A stretch of DNA of 64,000 nucleotides from Octopus sinensis (lineage: Eukaryota), in the NCBI RefSeq assembly GCF_006345805.1, contig NC_043005.1, forward strand, positions 81,530,001 to 81,594,000. The letters are read 5' to 3'. The position numbers were made by a program, and so were the translations under genes. Positions 7,191-58,176 of this stretch are shown in pieces. The notes beneath the pieces were generated by a model. It was given only the letters and a program-made list of their open reading frames with translations. It did not search any database and had not been told where the DNA came from. Positions within the stretch are counted from its first letter, which is position 1, and every line of letters starts with the position of its first letter.

Positions 7191-10010
7191 TTAGAATGTC
7201 TTTGTGCATTATGAATGATACATTTTAAGAAATAAATTATTACGTTACTCTCTTCTTATATGTCTCATCAACAGGTTGTTACTAATTACATGGCATGGTG
7301 CAATGATACAGTATTTCTACATAAAAGCATATTCTACTGCTGCATACGGTACTATGATATAAGGAATGATAGCTGGAACTGAATAGGAATGCAACAAGCC
7401 CCAAAACATGGGAGGACGGGAAACCCATTTGAATCAGTGCAAGTTCATGCGGTGGTCTTTTTTTTTTTTTTGCAAACAATAAACTTACGCAGATATTTTG
7501 AGTTCAATCCCCACTGAAGGAAGTATTTGAATAACAGCAGGAAAACACCCACGAGCTACTATTAAGGTTGATCTGTGTACCCTTAACATAATTCTCAGGG
7601 AGATAGAGAATATGACAAGGCCGGTCCTTTGAAACACAGGTAGAACTCATTTTTTTCCAGCTGGGTGGACTAGAACAACGTGAAATAAAGCGTATTATTC
7701 AAGGACACAACGCATCACTGAGAATTGAACTCACCCCCTTCCGACCTTGATTGATAATGAGATAAATAAATGCAAACGAAAACACTAAACACTAAGCAAT
7801 ACCCTTTCACGGGATAGTGATAGTTCGGCGCATATCAGAAATGATGGATCTGTAGCTCATACGTAGTGCTTTGGCCTCCTAATATAAATCTGGTATGTTC
7901 GATCGAGGTTAATTTGCAACTATTCCTAAATCATAAGATATGCTAAATGAGGTAAGAGTAAATATAAGTATGATCGGGCGAAAATATATCCGTTGATTAC
8001 AAGCTTGTACAAAACATGTGTAATGAAAATCGTATCGTGCAAGTTTAGGACGAAATCGAGCATCATCTATAATACCTATGATCAAAGTAATTCCAGTGAT
8101 AACCATCGGCTATTTTAGAATATGTCGATTTAAAATATGTAATAAGCTTGTTAAACAAGGTGTCATAGATGCAGATATGCTGTTAATCCTTGTGGGTTGT
8201 ACAGAGATGCAGAGTTCTCACCGTTTGATCGTTTTAATTAGGTTAAAAAAACTATGGCATCAGTATTAGCTAGGATATCAGTATGTAATTTGGTTAATAT
8301 CAACCACCACAAAAGAAATATATGAATACATAAAGCCGGTATATTCGATATATACAGAGTTGATTGGTATTAGGAATGAATGTTCGTCAATTATTATTCT
8401 TTTTTTTTTATATATATTTGTTCTCTTCCTTTGAAGAATTTATATATTCATATATGTTCGCTAATTTCCCAGAGTTTATATCAGAATTTTGTTACAACAA
8501 GTAAAGAAAGAAAAACAGCAAAGATCTTAAATAGAGAAAGAAGGAAGTAATAGAAGCGTAACTCTCTTGTCAATACAAGAAAATCTAATCAACATAGAAA
8601 ATGTAATAAAATGTATTGTAGATTTATTTCTAAAAATCCTAGCCTCGAGTAAATACTTATCTAAAAAGTGTAGATAAATTGTTTGAAACTTCACACTAAT
8701 TAGACCAAACATTTAATATATACTTTACATATATATTTCTTTATTTTTCATAGATATTGTTGACTGAAAGCGTTTGAGTGCCAATGTGAAATGGAAAATA
8801 CTTCACACAAATTAAATTTACATAAAGAAAATTACCTCTAACTCGCATTCTCTCCTTCAATTTCTCTCTAACACTCACTCCTGTATATTTTATAAATACA
8901 TTCATTACATAGATGTCTATGTATATATATATACGCACATATCTTAATGTGTAAGCTTGTGTATTTATGAAGGTATCTATGTGTCTGGGCAAACGTCAAT
9001 AGAAATAGCGATAAACATACTAATAAATAAAGGTAGGTAAATACACAGAGACACATTTTTCTAAATATTTATATATAGAAATATACATACACTTCATCAA
9101 ATAAACACACGTACATAAGTACACAACCACGTTCGCAGACACCTTGCAAGATATGTTTATATATCTACAAATGAATGTGTGAGTGTGTGTGTGCATTTGT
9201 GTGGTTGTATCAAAACACACACACACACATATAACTACATGTACACATATCACATACACACTAATATGAGTGCGTGTTGCAATTTGAGATTACGCAAATA
9301 TAAATCCATTTGTTTAGAACTTCTCGTTGCGTTTAAGAGACTAAGAGTAGAAAACTTCATCGTGAATGGAACCCCTGTCAATTGAAGGCTTAACATCTCA
9401 CACAACACTCAACGGTGATCGTTCTTACCTCAGTGGACTGAAGTAACGTCAAGTGGAGTGCTTTGATTAATGATACAATTGATAATCTATTAATAGGCAC
9501 TTATTAGTTCAGCTTTATCAGAGAATCGAACAAAATGACCCCTTTTGATGGTAATCGTAATCCTGAAACCAGCAACTCACTTGTTCCACAAAACCATACA
9601 CACACATACTCGCACACACGACTACACAGATACATGTGTATATACATGTATACATACATGCATGCATTTGCACATACATACGTACATGCATACATTCACA
9701 CATACACAGAAATACATATATGAAGATAGATAGATAGATAGATAGTAAGGGAGAGAGATTAGGGCTGTCTATATATATATACATACATATATATATATAT
9801 GTGTGTATAATATAATATAATATAATATAACATAATATAATATAAAGTTATAAATAACGAGAGAAATTAGTTTGATGAAATTTATTTAATCATTGGAAAT
9901 TCTCATATCACAACAATTGTTTCCCGACTTAAAACATGCAAAGATAAGTTACTTAATTATATTTTATAAGCAGTAAAATGCTTACATGTATGTATTTCTT
10001 TTATCATTTT

Positions 10011-18656: not shown

Positions 18657-20260
18657 ATACATATGTATATGCACACAAATATTTATATATGCATATATAT
18701 ATATATACAAACACACACACACACACGCACATATACAAATACTTTTAATAAACCAACAAAATCTTCACAAACTTTTAGTCTGTTTCACGCTTCCGTTCGT
18801 CAGAGTGTTGTGATCATACTGAAAAATTGCGATGCTATAGGTATATATATATTCGTTTGTTCTTTTATTTGTTTCTCCTGCATGTATATATATATATGTG
18901 CGTGTGTGTATTTATTTTTAAGAATGCTTATACACTCCTATTCACCCATATATATATATATATACAACGTGTGTGTGTATGTGTGTGCATTTATGTGTGC
19001 ATGTGTGTGTGTGTATGTGTGTGTGTGCGTGGAAAAAGAGAAACCAATAAATGATGTTATGTAAATTGGCATCAGATAAGCAATTAACTCCCTTGCATAC
19101 GCTCACACACACACACAAACACAGTACAATACAACACACACACATAAATACATATGTATATGCACACAAATATTTATATATGCATATATATATATATACA
19201 AACACACACACACACACACACGCACATATACAAATACTTTTAATAAACCAACAAAATCTTCACAAACTTTTAGTCTGTTTCACGCTTCCGTTCGTCAGAG
19301 TGTTGTGATCATACTGAAAAATTGCGATGCTATAGGTATATATATATTCGTTTGTTCTTTTATTTGTTTCTCCTGCATGTATATATATATATGTGCGTGT
19401 GTGTATTTATTTTTAAGAATGCTTATACACTCCTATTCACCCATATATATATATATATACAACGTGTGTGTGTATGTGTGTGCATTTATGTGTGCATGTG
19501 TGTGTGCGTGTATGTGTGTGTGTGCGTGGAAAAAGAGAAACCAATAAATGATGTTATGTAATTGGCATCAGATAAGCAATTAACTCCCTTGCATACGCTC
19601 ACACACACACACAAACACAGTACAATACAACACACACACATGCAAAAAACACAATACAACACACACACATACACAAACACAATACAACCACACACACACA
19701 CATAATACATATGTATATGCACACAAATATTTATATATGCATATATATATATATACAAACACACACACACACACACGCACATATACAAATACTTTTAATA
19801 AACCAACAAAATCTTCACAAACTTTTAGTCTGTTTCACGCTTCCGTTCGTCAGAGTGTTGTGATCATACTGAAAAATTGCGATGCTATAGGTATATATAT
19901 ATTCGTTTGTTCTTTTATTTGTTTCTCCTGCATGTATATATATATATGTGCGTGTGTGTATTTATTTTTAAGAATGCTTATACACTCCTATTCACCCATA
20001 TATATATATATATACAACGTGTGTGTGTATGTGTGTGCATTTATGTGTGCATGTGTGTGTGCGTGTATGTGTGTGTGTGCGTGGAAAAAGAGAAACCAAT
20101 AAATGATGTTATGTAAATTGGCATCAGATAAGCAATTAACTCCCTTGCATACGCTCACACACACACACAAACACAGTACAATACAACACACACACATGCA
20201 AAAACACAATACAACACACACACATACACAAACACAATACAACACACACAACACACATAC
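18657..20260. repeat. Near-identical tandem triplication of a 495-555 bp unit
   Basis: Anchor acttttaataaaccaac occurs at 18741, 19236 and 19791; unit joins fall in CA-rich tracts. Confidence 0.95.
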
Positions 20261-20871: not shown

Positions 20872-21355
20872 TTTTACGTGGCTCTATACCCAGCGTTTTT
20901 TATGTGGTGCCATCACCAATGTTTTTAATGTGGAATTACACCAGTGCTTTTTGTGTTGCACAAGCACCAGTGCTTTTTAAGCGGCACATCTACCAGTGCT
21001 TTTTAAGTAGCATAAGCAGTAGTGATTTTTTTTTAAGTGGCACAATACGAGTGCTTTTTAAGTGGCACAAGCACCAGTTTTTTTTTAAGTGGTACAACCA
21101 CCAGTGCTTTCTTTTTAAGTGGCACAACCACCAGTGTTTTTTTAAGTGACACAACCACCAGCGTTTTTTAAGTGGCACAAGCAACAGTGTTTCTTCTAAG
21201 TGGCACAACACCAGTGCTTTTTAAGTGGCACAAGCAACAGTGTTTTTTTTAAGTGGAACCTCACCAGTGCTTTTTCTGTAGCACATGCACAGTGCCTTTT
21301 TAAGAGGCACAAACACCAATGCTTTTTACGTGGAACCACCACCAGTGCATTTTTT
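20872..21355. repeat. Degenerate minisatellite, about 18 units of about 26 bp
   Basis: Consensus AAGTGGCACAAGCACCAGTGCTTTTT with variable T runs. Confidence 0.9.
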
Positions 21356-21480
21356 ACAGTTATTCATAATTGTATTGTAGTGACTGTAATTCTATAAGTA
21401 TGGAGAGATGTAGGGCAGGGTGAGACAGGACATTATCAATAGGGAATCACATAAAAGGTGTAGCGTAGGTTAACACTCAC

Positions 21481-21738
21481 CGTTACCATAAATATATTCC
21501 AAACAAAATAACCGGGTCGCCGCGCTGCTCGACATTTCACAGAGAGTGCTGACCGTCGAACAGTAGCATCTGCTTGGTCTATGGCCAGTTCCTTCTTCTC
21601 AGTTTCCGTATGCATGTAAAGATGCCATTCTTGTTCATCCACAAACGACTGTCGATTGACTACATGATGTTCATCTATGTCTTCAATCAATTCAACTTCA
21701 TATGAGGGAAGCTCGGAGGCCACAGTCACAGTGAGATC
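21481..21738 (-). CDS. Internal coding exon (86 aa) of a pentameric ligand-gated ion channel-like protein, probably of the Cys-less/Pro-loop orphan type
   Basis: Acceptor ttcttctttcag|GAT (AG at 21740-21739) and donor ACG|gtgagt (GT at 21480-21479); 258 bp, phase 0/0. Translation DLTVTVASELPSYEVELIEDIDEHHVVNRQSFVDEQEWHLYMHTETEKKELAIDQADATVRRSALSVKCRAARRPGYFVWNIFMVT shows the pLGIC pattern: D-L-T-V after the expected FPFDxQ loop, F-x-D-E-Q-E-W-x-L, and pre-M1 R-R-P-G-Y-F-V-W-N. Family assigned from motif recall, not a search. Confidence 0.85.
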
Positions 21739-21934
21739 CTGAAAGAAGAAAGCATGACAACCTTTATTGTAGAAGGCAATATCTGAAAGGAAACAAGACA
21801 AAACCACAAACATATATTGCTAGGGCGATTAGACGTTTTGGCGATTAGGTGTGACATCGCTGCATCGAAACGCTGAATTGTTTGACATCAGCCGTTTTAA
21901 TGATTTTCTTTTTTGATCTCTGTCTCCATAAGTG

Positions 21935-23536: not shown

Positions 23537-24055
23537 ATTTATTTCTTTATTGCCCACAAGGAGCTAAACATAGAGGGAACAAACAAGGGATTAAGTCGAT
23601 TACATCGACCCCAGTACGTAACTAGTACTTATTTAATCGACACCGAAAGAATGAAAGGCAAAATCGACCTTGGCGGAATTTGAACTCAGAACGTAGCGAC
23701 AGACAAAATACCTATTTCTTTACTACCCACAAGGGGCTAAACACAGAAAGGACAAACAAGGACAGTCAAACGGATTAAGTTGATTACATCGACCCCAGTG
23801 CGTAACTGGTACTTAATTTAATCGACTCCGAAAGGATGAAAGGCAAAGTAGACCTCGGCGGAATTTGAACTCAGAACGTAACGGCAGACGAAATACAGCT
23901 ACGTATTTCGCCCGGCTTGCTAACGTTTCTGCCAGCTCGCCGCCCTAAAAGATAAAGTCGACCCCGGCGGAATTTGAACTCAGAACGTAAAGCCAGATGA
24001 AATACTGCTAAGCATTTCGCCCGGCGTACTAACGATTCAGCCTGGTCGCTACCTT
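23537..24055 (-). mobile_element. SINE family A dimer plus an extra head fragment
   Basis: Same body-tail junction at 23710/23711; a further 5' fragment at about 23950-24055. Confidence 0.8.
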
Positions 24056-50703: not shown

Positions 50704-51232
50704 TCTTTTTACCCAAGGTGTCATTTACTTCTATTAAAAATTTACAACGTTTAAAGAACAACATGAGTTAAATTGAATAATACAATGGAGAAAATAGAAT
50801 GAATGTAGATAAACATCTTTGCTCAATGATTGTTAAATGTTAAATGTAAGTATTTGTCTTAAACTAAGTTTATTAATAGCAACTGAAAGTTTGCTGACGG
50901 AGGCAGTCAATACGGAAGATTAGCTTCAAATTTATTGTAAAATTCGCGTTAACTGGGAAGTCGAGTTTTATGTTATGACTTATTCAGCCAGTAAGAAAAT
51001 ATCGCTTCTACATTTGATGGAGGAAAAAAAAAATTTTAAAAAAAGTAAAGCCTCATTAATTCAATTTATCTCAACTTTTTTTCGGGATTCACTAATAATT
51101 ACGTTAATTACCTTGTCGCCTTTTTTTTATCTTTTTTAATTTCTTTTTATCAAATAAGAATTTTCAATTGATTAAGAAAGTATTTGTTCGAGTATTACAC
51201 GATATTTTTTTTTCTTTTCAATAATAACGCTT

Positions 51233-51274
<42 letters not shown>

Positions 51275-51321
51275 TTACTGCTGCTGCTGCTGCTGCTGCT
51301 GTTCCTGCTGCTACTGATACC

Positions 51322-51548
51322 TATTTCTTTATTAACCACAAGGGGCTAAACATAGAGGGACAAACAAGGACAGACACAGGTATTAAGTCGATTACATCGA
51401 CCCCAGTGCATAACTGGTACTTAATATATCGACCCCGAAAGGATGAAAGGCAAAGTCGACATCGGCGGAATTCGAACTCAGAACGTAACGGCAGACGAAA
51501 TAACGCTAAGCATTTCGCCCGGCGTGCTAACGATTCTGCCAGCTCGCC
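51322..51548 (-). mobile_element. SINE family A with 15-bp TSD
   Basis: GCTGCTACTGATACC at 51307-51321 and 51549-51563. Confidence 0.85.
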
Positions 51549-51825
51549 GCTGCTACTGATACCACCACCACCACCACTACTACTACTATTACAATTTGTT
51601 GGAGTAGTAGCTTGAGCAGCTATAGAAGAACTTACGTAATTTACTCCGTATGTCAGCCTTGATATATTTAACTTAATACCATTAGAGACATTAAGCCATT
51701 TCCTTTAGATTATAACATTGTTTATTCGTTATAATTATGTTCTTAGAAATTAACCTGTAGCTTATTTCTTTTTATATATACGTCAGCTTATCACCTAACT
51801 TATAAAGCCAGAAGAGTTTGGCTAT

Positions 51826-56759: not shown

Positions 56760-57000
56760 ATGAGATATCTCAGAGAAATCCAACAGAGACGAGAAAAAGG
56801 TGCAACAAATAGAAAAAAGTCTAATATCAGTAAAAACCCCCTCTGGAAATGCAAGAATAAAGTGACCCGAAAGATTATTGTAGACAGTAAAACGAGGAAA
56901 ATAAATTTCATCATGGCCTCGATTGATTATGGTAAAACGTTTGATTGTGCTACCCATTCGTCGCCACTAGGGAATCAATACATAAATGAATCAATCCTGA
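56760..57000 (+). pseudogene. Reverse transcriptase fragment of an R4/Dong-like LINE
   Basis: KIIVDSKTRKINFIMASIDYGKTFDCATHS matches the RT motif ILEDxKxRKxNLxMAWIDYKKAFDSVPHSW. Confidence 0.65.
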
Positions 57001-58176
57001 TACTAAGAAAAATCGTTAATGCTCACAAATCAAAAATCACCAAATGTTGGTCTGAGATTCTGCACTTTGAGTACAAGTCACAGAATAGTTTGCTATTTGT
57101 ATTTTCGGAGTCTATAAATAAAGGACTAGATAAGTTGTGCGGTCGATTTTTCGCTTTTCTTCCACTTACTCTCTCTCTCATTTCTCTCCTTATCAATCTT
57201 TCCCTCCTGCCCCCTCTCTCTCTCTCCTAGGATATATTACGTTACTCTGTGAGATGGTTTGTAGGAGACTAGAAATTGATGAGTGGTGAAAGACGGGCTA
57301 CCAAATTGCCGCCCAGAAAGAAAACTATATTCAACTGCAGTGTTGGGGTTAGTCGGATGTGCTGGAAGGTACAGCTTAGAGCGGGAATGAAGAAAAAAGA
57401 AGACTAATAAAATATTGTAACTATGTCACATAAAAATGGAAAAAGAAATCATTCCAAAGCAAAGAGCAAATAATTTAATCCAAGTTGTACTTATGTAAGA
57501 AAATACATTTTCCCAGATGACTCATGTTTTTCTTATTTTTGAAGTGAGAAACCCAACAATGTCTCAGAAATGGGTTTGGTTTTAATGGCTAGTGGTAAGT
57601 ATAATATATACAAGCAGTAGAATACAAGGGATCACAATATTTCCTCTGGCTTCTTAGTCTTTTTCATGTCTAATTTTATTGCGAAACACGATTATCTTAG
57701 AAAAGATATCCGACGGAAAATATGTTGACTATTCAATGCAAAAACCGTTGGAAAAGTCTATAAAAATGAACGAAATACGGTGCGGATACAACCTCGATAT
57801 TATTGAATTAGAAAAGAAATATGCATTTCAACACGAAATCTAAACCCCTGCAATTAATTTTTCTTACAGCTTGCAGACTGTAGCAGCACTTTCCACTTCA
57901 TGTATATTAGGCAAAAAATAAATGAAAAAATAAAATTCAAATTAATTAAAAACGGAGAAAAATAATCGCTGCACAAAACAATTCGTCCAAGATCAACGCT
58001 CGGCAATCTGGTGTAATCTTATAAAAGCATTTAGGCTATTGCAATATAAATTGTGCGGATGGGCAATTGGATTAAACAGACGTTTATATAAACGGAAACA
58101 ATAACCAAAATTAAAGATCTGGAAATTGAGATTAGCAGAATGCCGGAATTGAATATAGGAGCAGTTTCAGTAATAA

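What the first reader, a model, noticed from the sequence alone, without database searches (positions are those of the whole stretch)
21481..21738. Exon of an orphan Cys-less-type pentameric ligand-gated ion channel
Seen: canonical splice sites and an open 86-codon phase-0 exon with FVDEQEW and RAARRPGYFVWN motifs. Known: pLGICs have an FPFDxQ loop followed by the beta8-beta10 strands and a pre-M1 RR..YY/F motif; a Cys-less clade in molluscs and other invertebrates has largely unknown ligands. Inference: this exon belongs to that clade rather than to the nAChR-derived cephalopod chemotactile receptors, so it could be an uncharacterised receptor.
Basis: partly seen in the sequence, partly recalled or inferred. 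Interest (0 to 1): 0.7.

Follow-up and report, generated by a model that had tools for sequence, protein, structure and literature searches.

The report
Octopus Cys-less ion-channel gene exon
This is a real, strongly conserved coding exon of an already annotated octopus gene for a "Cys-less", bacterial-type pentameric ligand-gated ion channel whose ligand is unknown and whose sequence features hint that its ligand-binding domain faces the cytosol.

Summary
Minus strand 21738→21481 is an open 86-codon, phase-0 exon with ag|…|gtgagt and both motifs.

[quoted passage not shown] Those genes span about 525-538 kb, so the 64-kb window holds only this exon.

Selection is very strong. A second cephalopod-like locus has 48 synonymous and 0 non-synonymous differences. 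Conservation stops at the splice sites in four genomic loci, and a bivalve cDNA joins the exon to …FPFDVQ and FLICSL….

The gene belongs to the published metazoan Cys-less clade. ELIC is its best solved relative, and the AlphaFold model has the pLGIC fold. It is not a chemotactile receptor.

One correction: FVDEQEW is the loop-F/β9 junction, not the FPFDxQ Pro-loop, which the upstream exon encodes. Exon residue 2 (Leu) sits where the second Cys-loop cysteine would be.

The finding is correct but already known, and function is still unknown.

Noticed in passing: 81 of 83 members lack a signal-peptide-like N-terminus. They also have a tiny M3-M4 loop and a conserved basic post-M4 tail. This suggests a cytosol-facing ligand-binding domain, untested.

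The parts
21481..21738 (-). Internal coding exon, phase 0/0, 86 codons. [quoted passage not shown] It encodes beta7 (loop B), beta8, loop F, beta9, loop C, beta10, the pre-M1 linker and the first 11 residues of M1.
   Evidence: sequence and translation; 86/86 identity to XP_052827029.1 and XP_036361945.1; dN/dS, conserved ag/gt, cDNA junctions; secondary structure E135-147, E151-155, E174-188, E197-209, H212-234.
21739..21762 (-). 3' splice acceptor: pyrimidine-rich tract ...gtcatgctttcttctttcag ending in AG directly before the exon.
   Evidence: An AG acceptor sits at the same position in L001 (tatatcttacag), L003 (ttttttttgcag) and L005 (tgtttgttttag).
21475..21480 (-). 5' splice donor gtgagt (GTRAGT consensus).
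   Evidence: A GT donor sits at the same position in L001 (gtaagt), L003 (gtgagg) and L005 (gtatgt). The cDNA L004 continues with TTCCTGATATGT (FLIC) instead.
21733..21735 (-). Codon for Leu (exon residue 2, protein L138), at the position of the second Cys-loop cysteine (FPFDVQ-D-L versus classical FPxDxQ-x-C). This is one of the two diagnostic 'Cys-less' positions.
   Evidence: protein context ...NDFPFDVQDLTV, no Cys between residues 100 and 204. PMC4795631, read, says the second Cys is typically replaced by a hydrophobic residue.
21625..21645 (-). FVDEQEW motif (protein 168-174). E173, W174 and L176 are invariant in 70 family members. It is the end of loop F and start of beta9, aligned to ELIC ...E155-E-I-D-E159-W160. 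It is not the Pro-loop.
   Evidence: ELIC alignment; invariant columns; beta9 starts at residue 174.
21559..21582 (-). Loop C (protein 189-196, IDQADATV), between beta9 and beta10. It is four residues shorter than in ELIC. The positions aligned with the ELIC aromatic residues Y175 and F188 are Ile189 (first residue of this loop) and Arg198 (in beta10, just after it).
   Evidence: That Y175 and F188 line the ELIC agonist site is from my own knowledge of ELIC structures.
21496..21531 (-). RAARRPGYFVWN (protein 206-217): end of beta10, pre-M1 RRP (R209, R210 and P211 invariant, aligned to ELIC R199-N200-P201) and the start of M1 (N217 invariant).
21436..21480 (-). Intron sequence that stays open for 14 codons after the donor (VSVNLRYTFYVIPY*). 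It is identical to the C-terminal tail of the truncated O. vulgaris model CAI9729321.1 ('isoform X3'). It is most likely a read-through annotation artefact and not part of the channel.

Best explanation
Window 21481-21738 (minus strand) is a constitutive internal exon of the octopus orthologue of the metazoan 'Cys-less' (Pro-loop, ELIC-like) pentameric ligand-gated ion channel. The gene is about 0.5 Mb long and all its other exons lie outside the 64-kb window. The exon encodes the C-terminal half of the ligand-binding beta-sandwich: beta7 to beta10, which carry loops B, F and C. It also encodes the invariant RRP pre-M1 linker and the first three turns of M1. Shown here: exon boundaries, coding status, very strong purifying selection, family membership and fold. 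Inferred by homology: five subunits form a channel, and a ligand bound at subunit interfaces made largely of this exon's loops moves the pre-M1, Pro-loop and M2-M3 junction. That movement opens a pore lined by M2 (Q2', T6', L9', with a neutral P-Q-N-R intracellular-end motif). The ligand and the ion selectivity are unknown. The pocket lacks the aromatic loop-C residues of ELIC and is very acidic, so a classical amine transmitter bound by cation-pi contacts is unlikely.
For: The sequence and splice sites are. The exon is 86/86 identical to RefSeq Octopus proteins, flanked there by ...NDFPFDVQ and FLICSLAFTTFSV. The gene range is 525 kb in GCA_001194135.2 and 538 kb in GCA_006345805.1, which agrees with tblastn finding no other exon in the window. 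Conservation stops at the exon ends. Against L005 there are 0 non-synonymous and 48 synonymous changes, and ag/gt is conserved in L001, L003 and L005. The cDNA L004 shows the junctions. Full-length relatives carry Pfam Neur_chan_LBD and Neur_chan_memb. ELIC is the best solved relative, E=1.3e-18 over residues 28-311. The AlphaFold2 model has pLDDT 81.8 and pTM 0.73, with a beta-sandwich plus four helices. Foldseek gives E about 1e-19, probability 1.00 and TM-score up to 0.74 to GlyR, GABA-A and ELIC. In 70 relatives FPFD, E173-W174, R209-R210-P211, R0' and K15' are invariant, and 6' (Thr in 63 of 70) and 9' (Leu in 70 of 70) are conserved. P0047 (A0A5K4EMP5) links the family to the published Cys-less clade.
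Against: No RNA-seq from the window's own species was available, so the junctions rest on RefSeq models, cross-species conservation and a bivalve cDNA. The 86 aa alone gives no Pfam or PDB hit. Two annotated models, O. vulgaris CAI9729321.1 and the older O. bimaculoides XP_014790781.1, read through the donor, so some transcripts may end here. No channel activity, ligand or pentamer has been shown for any member of this clade.
Confidence: 0.95

Rival explanations
1. The exon and gene are as above, but the channel sits 'inside-out' compared with classical Cys-loop receptors. The ligand-binding domain and both termini would face the cytosol, with only the short M1-M2 and M3-M4 loops exoplasmic. 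The channel would then be gated by an intracellular ligand or ion, at the plasma membrane or on an organelle.
For: Only 2 of 83 full-length members have a signal-peptide-like hydrophobic window (KD >= 2.0 over 10 aa) in the first 40 residues, and 5 more start directly at beta1. The same measure flags M1 in 88 of 88. A bivalve transcript has in-frame stops upstream of its first Met. N-terminal extensions have a median of 81 aa and are rich in K/R/D/E. The M3-M4 loop has a median of 9 aa. The post-M4 tail has a median of 47 aa, with 8 K/R in its first 20 residues. K+R sums to 12.8 on the LBD side and 3.1 on the other side. The tail motif KRRxMxxKD is nearly invariant and continues the M4 helix to residue 376 in the model. 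The LBD has only one conserved Cys (C205). It has 18 N-glycosylation sequons against 60.6 +/- 7.1 expected, and a median net charge of -10. No paper discussing this was found.
Against: No topology or signal-peptide predictor was available, and no classical pLGICs were run as controls with the same measures. Bacterial relatives such as ELIC have periplasmic LBDs. Parasitic flatworm members have long (56-118 aa) M3-M4 loops like classical cytoplasmic domains. Rare proteins translocate long N-terminal domains without a cleavable signal peptide. The sequences are related, so the counts are not independent. Some gene models may have wrong 5' ends.
Confidence: 0.45
2. The gene is a classical-orientation neurotransmitter receptor. 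The LBD would be extracellular, translocated by M1 or a cryptic signal, and gated by an as yet untested extracellular transmitter or sensory ligand in neurons.
For: All characterised pLGICs have extracytoplasmic LBDs. According to PMC9874803, citing Ross et al. 2018, planarian homologues are expressed in mechanosensory neurons and their RNAi gives seizure-like movements. The cephalopod transcripts P0208 and P0209 have an Ala-rich stretch near the N-terminus.
Against: There is no signal peptide in 81 of 83 members, a strongly basic conserved C-tail, no conserved disulfide or sequons, and the positive-inside balance points the other way.
Confidence: 0.45
3. The exon is a relic, meaning a pseudo-exon or decaying fragment of a pLGIC gene that is no longer expressed as part of a channel. 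Alternatively it makes only a truncated LBD protein, as in the read-through models.
For: No other exon lies within 64 kb. Truncated read-through models exist. Decayed partial copies of this exon occur in another species' intron.
Against: There are 0 non-synonymous against 48 synonymous differences to L005, and dN/dS is 0.065 to L001. Splice sites are intact in four loci. Full-length RefSeq isoforms and full-length cephalopod transcripts (P0208, P0209) contain the exon exactly. The 0.5-Mb gene span explains the isolation.
Confidence: 0.03
4. The exon belongs to a cephalopod chemotactile receptor or another nAChR-like subunit.
For: None beyond superfamily membership.
Against: The exon is spliced inside a 0.5-Mb multi-exon gene. 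Leu sits at the second Cys-loop position and no Cys flanks the Pro-loop. The best solved relative is ELIC, not nAChR. In cephalopod LGIC trees the cys-less group is the outgroup to both the nACh-like and GABA-A-like families. Chemotactile receptors are described as intronless.
Confidence: 0.01

Closest known systems
Metazoan 'Cys-less' Pro-loop receptors (Jaiteh, Taly & Henin 2016, PMC4795631), including the schistosome Cys-less LGICs (Johnson et al. 2023, PMC9874803) and the planarian gabrg-type genes
   Same: Same family. There is no Cys on either side of the FPFD Pro-loop and no second Cys-loop. The LBD plus M1-M4 architecture is shared. The taxonomic range is the same: molluscs, annelids, nemerteans, brachiopods, rotifers and flatworms. 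P0047 (A0A5K4EMP5) is both a hit of this family and a named schistosome Cys-less channel.
   Different: Molluscan and most other members have Gln at M2 -2' and Asn at -1' (Q in 59 of 70, N in 66 of 70). The schistosome paper stresses Glu at -2'. Octopus has a 9-aa M3-M4 loop, against 113-118 aa in the three parasitic flatworm members sampled (56 aa in the free-living Macrostomum).
ELIC (Erwinia/Dickeya chrysanthemi ligand-gated ion channel, e.g. PDB 2VL0, 8D67)
   Same: It is the best solved relative by sequence, E=1.3e-18 over residues 28-311. Shared features are FPFD, the E-W motif of loop F/beta9, the R-x-P pre-M1, a near-identical M2 (RLQLSFTLVLTAVAF against RLQTSFTLMLTVVAY), and a short M3-M4 loop.
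   Different: ELIC is a bacterial protein with a periplasmic LBD. It has Glu at -1', aromatic loop-C residues (Y175, F188) and an M1 proline (P211). The octopus protein has Asn, Ile/Arg and Val at those positions. It also has a loop C four residues shorter, a charged N-terminal extension and a long basic post-M4 helix.
Classical animal Cys-loop receptors (GlyR, GABA-A, nAChR, 5-HT3)
   Same: Same fold (Foldseek E about 1e-19, TM-score 0.6-0.7). Shared elements are the Pro-loop, pre-M1 Arg, 6' Thr and 9' Leu.
   Different: The octopus protein has no Cys-loop disulfide, no signal peptide, no large M3-M4 cytoplasmic domain and no N-terminal alpha-helix. It has a long basic C-tail. Sequence identity is only 16-19%.
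Cephalopod chemotactile receptors (CRs)
   Same: Same pLGIC superfamily and same animals.
   Different: CRs are nAChR-derived and intronless. This gene is ELIC-like, Cys-less, multi-exon, about 0.5 Mb long, and very highly conserved rather than lineage-expanded.

Membership tests
Pentameric ligand-gated ion channel (Pro-loop receptor) superfamily | Neur_chan_LBD beta-sandwich followed by the Neur_chan_memb domain | tested here: met
   PF02931 and PF02932 are recorded for the octopus proteins P0210 and P0219 and score above or near the gathering cut-off in relatives. The exon alone gives no Pfam hit. P0023, which covers this exon plus the upstream one, scores 20.4 bits against a cut-off of 26.
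Pentameric ligand-gated ion channel (Pro-loop receptor) superfamily | Pro-loop with the conserved F/Y-P-x-D motif | tested here: met
   F131, P132 and D134 are invariant in 70 relatives. The motif is encoded by the upstream exon, not in the window.
Pentameric ligand-gated ion channel (Pro-loop receptor) superfamily | Four transmembrane helices M1-M4, with M2 carrying 6' Ser/Thr and 9' Leu | tested here: met
   The AlphaFold2 model has helices 212-234, 240-264, 270-298 and 302-376. The 6' position is Thr in 63 of 70 and the 9' position is Leu in 70 of 70.
Pentameric ligand-gated ion channel (Pro-loop receptor) superfamily | Overall subunit fold matches solved pLGICs | tested here: met
   Foldseek against the PDB gives 1104 matches at E <= 0.001. 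The 50 best listed are all pLGICs (GlyR, GABA-A, ELIC), with E about 1e-19 and probability 1.00.
Pentameric ligand-gated ion channel (Pro-loop receptor) superfamily | Pentameric assembly and ligand-gated ion conduction | not testable with these tools
   Only a monomer model was made. No functional data exist for the clade.
Metazoan Cys-less clade | No cysteines flanking the Pro-loop | tested here: met
   The octopus protein has no Cys between residue 100 and C205. The second Cys position is L138, which is exon residue 2. Only one Cys column is conserved in the LBD.
Metazoan Cys-less clade | No second (loop C or anionic-type) Cys pair | tested here: met
   Loop C (IDQADATV) has no Cys.
Metazoan Cys-less clade | Groups with published clade members rather than with Cys-loop receptors | tested here: inconclusive
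   No tree was built here. Support comes from E-values: A0A5K4EMP5 (P0047) scores 1.3e-38 against P0023, and ELIC scores 1e-18 against about 1e-11 for GABA-A subunits.
Cephalopod chemotactile receptors | nAChR-like Cys-loop subunit encoded by an intronless gene | tested here: not met
   The exon is spliced in a gene of 525-538 kb. It is Cys-less. ELIC is the nearest solved relative.

The most novel reading that the evidence does not exclude
The whole metazoan Cys-less clade, including this octopus gene, could be an 'inside-out' pLGIC. With no signal peptide, the N-terminal extension, the ligand-binding domain, the M2-M3 loop and the conserved basic post-M4 helix would all be cytosolic. The channel would then be gated by an intracellular ligand or ion. 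This would also explain why bath-applied transmitters have not de-orphanised the clade.
Probability: 0.45. Interest if true: 0.85.

Novelty: already known. Interest (0 to 1): 0.4.

Why it matters
The exon itself adds nothing new. The gene is in RefSeq and its clade is published and is already used as the outgroup in cephalopod LGIC trees. What makes it worth noting is how little is known about the clade. It is one of the three deep branches of animal pLGICs, it is absent from vertebrates, Drosophila and C. elegans, and it is proposed as an anthelmintic target in schistosomes. No ligand, ion selectivity or localisation is known. Its conservation is extreme: 86/86 residues are identical across a divergence at which synonymous sites are saturated. 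The family-wide absence of a signal peptide and the charge distribution suggest a simple, testable reason for its orphan status, namely that the ligand-binding domain faces the cytosol. If confirmed, that would be the first intracellularly gated member of the Cys-loop/Pro-loop superfamily.

Tried and rejected
- **Exon alone:** Pfam and PDB searches with the 86 aa gave no family. The only PDB hit was a chance one, TBC1D15 at E=0.92.
- **Other exons in the window:** none were found by any of these:
  - a regex scan of all six frames for FPFDxQ, WxPxxxxxN and pre-M1 motifs;
  - tblastx of three homologous loci, each with 10 kb of flank either side;
  - tblastn with eight relatives, three cephalopod proteins and the O. 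vulgaris alternative N-terminus.

  The weak hits at 8676-8647 and 8048-7965 are in the wrong order and were rejected as chance.
- **P0001 and its contigs:** I first took P0001 (99% identical at protein level) to be the same species. Its DNA is only 81% identical, and only within the exon, so it is a different taxon.
- **Isoform X2 look-ups:** these were not on record. Isoform X1 gave gene spans but no DNA.
- **Identifying source organisms:** a literature search for the SRA and ERZ run accessions found 0 papers.
- **Literature on pLGIC topology:** searches for an inverted topology or a missing signal peptide found nothing relevant. PMC4795631 does not discuss it.
- **RNA genes:** the tRNA and Rfam scans of the window found nothing.
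- **Pseudo-exon reading:** rejected on dN/dS.
- **Chemotactile-receptor reading:** rejected on gene structure, the absence of the Cys-loop cysteines and the nearest relatives.
- **Searches not run:** I ran no further search on classical pLGIC controls. The contrast with classical receptors therefore rests on textbook knowledge.

Full report
**1. The observation**

Read on the minus strand, the region is ...gtcatgctttcttctttcag|GATCTCACTGTG...TTTATGGTAACG|gtgagtgttaac. Bases 21738 down to 21481 are 258 nt, or 86 codons with no stop. They translate to DLTVTVASELPSYEVELIEDIDEHHVVNRQSFVDEQEWHLYMHTETEKKELAIDQADATVRRSALSVKCRAARRPGYFVWNIFMVT. The coordinates, strand, splice signals and phase are all correct.

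**2. It is a real coding exon**

A word-indexed search with the 86 aa returned 30 proteins at 46-99% identity (54% over a partial match for the weakest). Nearly all were short single-ORF calls on eukaryotic contigs. In their alignment, similarity begins and ends exactly at the exon boundaries.

The contigs carrying the 99%-identical protein P0001 are only 81% identical at DNA level, and only inside the exon. Codon by codon, that locus (L005) differs from the window at 48 synonymous and 0 non-synonymous positions, and its synonymous sites are saturated. Against another locus (L001), dN/dS is 0.065.

The ag acceptor and gt donor sit at the same positions in L001, L003 and L005. A 2.6-kb transcript contig from a bivalve (L004, encoding P0035) joins the exon to TTCGACGTTCAG (FDVQ) upstream and TTCCTGATATGT (FLIC) downstream.

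**3. Which gene it belongs to**

[quoted passage not shown] Among them are Octopus bimaculoides XP_052827029.1 and XP_052827028.1, O. sinensis XP_036361945.1 and XP_036361944.1, O. vulgaris CAI9729321.1 and Argonauta hians GAB1602453.1. Residues 137-222 of the two Octopus RefSeq proteins are identical to the window exon at 86 of 86 positions. In those proteins the exon is preceded by ...ENLELNDFPFDVQ and followed by FLICSLAFTTFSV....

The gene range on record is 525 kb in O. bimaculoides and 538 kb in O. sinensis, for a protein of about 420 aa. That explains why tblastn with eleven family proteins finds no other exon anywhere in the 64-kb window. The upstream intron is therefore longer than 42 kb and the downstream one longer than 21 kb.

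The 14 codons that stay open past the donor (VSVNLRYTFYVIPY) are identical to the tail of the truncated O. vulgaris model. The corresponding O. bimaculoides tail differs. The window therefore most likely comes from O. vulgaris or a very close relative. This is an inference from 14 residues only.

**4. What the protein is**

- The exon alone hits nothing in Pfam or the PDB.
- A Macrostomum fragment that also covers the upstream exon hits Neur_chan_LBD weakly (20.4 bits).
- Full-length relatives hit Neur_chan_LBD and Neur_chan_memb.
- An exhaustive HMMER search found 953 cluster representatives at E <= 0.001.
- The best solved relative by sequence is the bacterial channel ELIC, at E=1.3e-18 over residues 28-311. 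GABA-A and glycine receptor subunits score 1e-11 to 1e-9.
- An AlphaFold2 model of the O. bimaculoides protein, built on 70 relatives, has mean pLDDT 81.8 and pTM 0.73. It shows a beta-sandwich followed by helices 212-234, 240-264, 270-298 and 302-376.
- Foldseek matches that model to GlyR, GABA-A and ELIC chains at E about 1e-19, probability 1.00.

The protein has no cysteine between residue 100 and C205. The Pro-loop reads F-MENLELNDFPFDVQD-L, with Leu138 (exon residue 2) where classical receptors have the second Cys.

One family hit, A0A5K4EMP5, is named as a schistosome 'Cys-less' channel in Johnson et al. 2023. The clade was defined by Jaiteh et al. 2016. [quoted passage not shown] A molluscan transcriptome survey lists a Cys-less clade of 231 sequences, distinct from the CR and CR-like clades.

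**5. What this exon contributes**

From the ELIC alignment and the model, the exon encodes the following elements:

| Element | Protein residues | Note |
|---|---|---|
| beta7 with loop B | 137-147 | Glu145 aligns with ELIC E131 |
| beta8 | 151-155 | |
| loop F | about 156-173 | |
| beta9 | 174-188 | |
| loop C | 189-196 | |
| beta10 | 197-209 | |
| pre-M1 linker | R209-R210-P211 | aligned to ELIC R199-N200-P201 |
| M1, first 11 residues | 212-222 | |

FVDEQEW (168-174) aligns to ELIC E155-E-I-D-E159-W160, at the loop-F/beta9 junction. The pre-M1 assignment is right.

Columns invariant across the 70 relatives and lying inside the exon are D137, D156, E173, W174, L176, R209, R210, P211 and N217.

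The positions aligned with the ELIC loop-C aromatics Y175 and F188 are Ile and Arg, and loop C is four residues shorter. The conserved M1 proline (ELIC P211) is Val here.

M2 reads P(-3') Q(-2') N(-1') R(0') L Q L S F T(6') L V L(9') T A V A F K(15'). R0' and K15' are invariant, Leu fills 9' in all 70 and Thr fills 6' in 63 of 70. There is no acidic residue at -1' or -2' in most members. Charge selectivity therefore cannot be read from the sequence.

**6. Likely mechanism**

By homology (inferred, not shown), five subunits form a channel and a ligand binds at subunit interfaces built largely from this exon's loops B, C and F. Movement passes through the pre-M1 RRP, the Pro-loop and the M2-M3 loop and opens the 9' Leu gate.

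The only functional hint in the literature is second-hand. Planarian homologues are expressed in mechanosensory neurons, and their knock-down causes seizure-like movement (PMC9874803, citing Ross et al. 2018).

**7. An unexpected family-wide feature**

- **Signal peptide.** None of the full-length proteins I read has an N-terminal signal peptide. Among 88 full-length members starting with Met, 5 begin directly at beta1. Only 2 of the other 83 have a 10-residue window with mean Kyte-Doolittle hydropathy >= 2.0 in the first 40 residues. The same measure flags M1 in 88 of 88. The bivalve transcript has in-frame stops upstream of its first Met.
- **Loops and tails.** These figures come from the 70-sequence alignment:

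| Region | Median length | Charge |
|---|---|---|
| N-terminal extension | 81 aa | rich in K/R/D/E |
| M3-M4 loop | 9 aa | |
| post-M4 tail | 47 aa | 8 K/R in its first 20 residues |

  K+R sums to about 12.8 on the LBD side (pre-M1, M2-M3 loop and tail) and about 3.1 on the other side.
- **Conserved tail.** The tail motif KRRxMxxKD is nearly invariant. In the model it continues the M4 helix to residue 376.
- **LBD composition.** The LBD has a single conserved Cys. It has 18 N-glycosylation sequons where composition-preserving shuffles give 60.6 +/- 7.1. Its median net charge is -10.

By the positive-inside rule, and because a 185-aa or longer N-terminal domain without a signal sequence is rarely translocated, these features point to a cytosolic ligand-binding domain. 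I found no paper that raises this.

Several caveats apply:
- No topology predictor was run, and no classical controls were run with the same measures.
- The sequences are related, so the counts are not independent.
- Parasitic flatworm members have long M3-M4 loops.
- Some cephalopod transcripts have an Ala-rich N-terminal stretch.

I put this reading at roughly even odds and list it as the novel case, not as the main conclusion.

**8. Verdict**

It describes an exon of a gene that is already annotated and a clade that is already published. As a discovery the exon itself is therefore ordinary. Its interest lies in the unknown biology of the clade and in the testable topology hypothesis.

Noticed in passing
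window 21436-21480 (minus strand), just past the exon's donor: The frame stays open for 14 codons into the intron (VSVNLRYTFYVIPY*). The O. vulgaris model CAI9729321.1 ('isoform X3', 242 aa) ends with exactly this tail. The older O. bimaculoides XP_014790781.1 has a similar but different tail. These LBD-only models are either read-through annotation artefacts or real truncated transcripts. The identity also suggests the window is from O. vulgaris or O. sinensis.
   Followed up: partly
Family-wide (alignment A2, 70 proteins; 88 full-length members): There is no signal peptide in 81 of 83 members, and 5 more start at beta1. The N-terminal extensions are charged, the M3-M4 loop is 9 aa, and the basic post-M4 tail (KRRxMxxKD) is nearly invariant and helical to residue 376. 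The LBD has one conserved Cys and is depleted in glycosylation sequons. Together these suggest a cytosol-facing ligand-binding domain.
   Followed up: partly
window 20896-21358: A minisatellite of 26/53-nt units (consensus about TTTTTAAGTGGCACAACCACCAGTGC) lies in the intron and ends 123 nt downstream of the exon's donor.
   Followed up: no
window 18659-20204: Three tandem copies of a unit of about 500-555 bp (85-100% identical), flanked by TA/CA microsatellites, lie in the downstream intron. They give rise to the near-identical mechanical ORFs at 18663-19064 and 19737-20102.
   Followed up: no
window 23631-23711 and 23816-23896, and similar sequence elsewhere (e.g. around 11837, 31112, 51184-51615): Dispersed SINE-like repeat copies whose translation recurs as ...NWYLIYRPRKDERQSRP.... 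ARAGORN finds no tRNA and Rfam gives no hit in the window. The window is otherwise dominated by TA/CA microsatellites and low-complexity sequence.
   Followed up: partly
window 56760-57230 (+): A mechanical ORF with a reverse-transcriptase-like stretch (...ASIDYGKTFDCATHSSPL...). It probably comes from a decayed LINE fragment and was not searched.
   Followed up: no
L001/L002 9544-9636 and about 9700-9760: In a contig whose exon is closest to the bivalve sequences (ENA ERZ25073280 and ERZ25073293), the intron about 390 nt upstream of the orthologous exon holds decayed partial duplicates of the exon's first 31 codons. They have their own AG and are interrupted by a (TTA)n microsatellite. The window has no such copy.
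   Followed up: partly
L005-L014 (Logan contigs from ten sequencing runs): A second taxon has the exon at 86/86 amino-acid identity but only 81% DNA identity (48 synonymous changes). This is unusually strong conservation for a ligand-binding domain. The organism could not be identified from the run accessions.
   Followed up: partly
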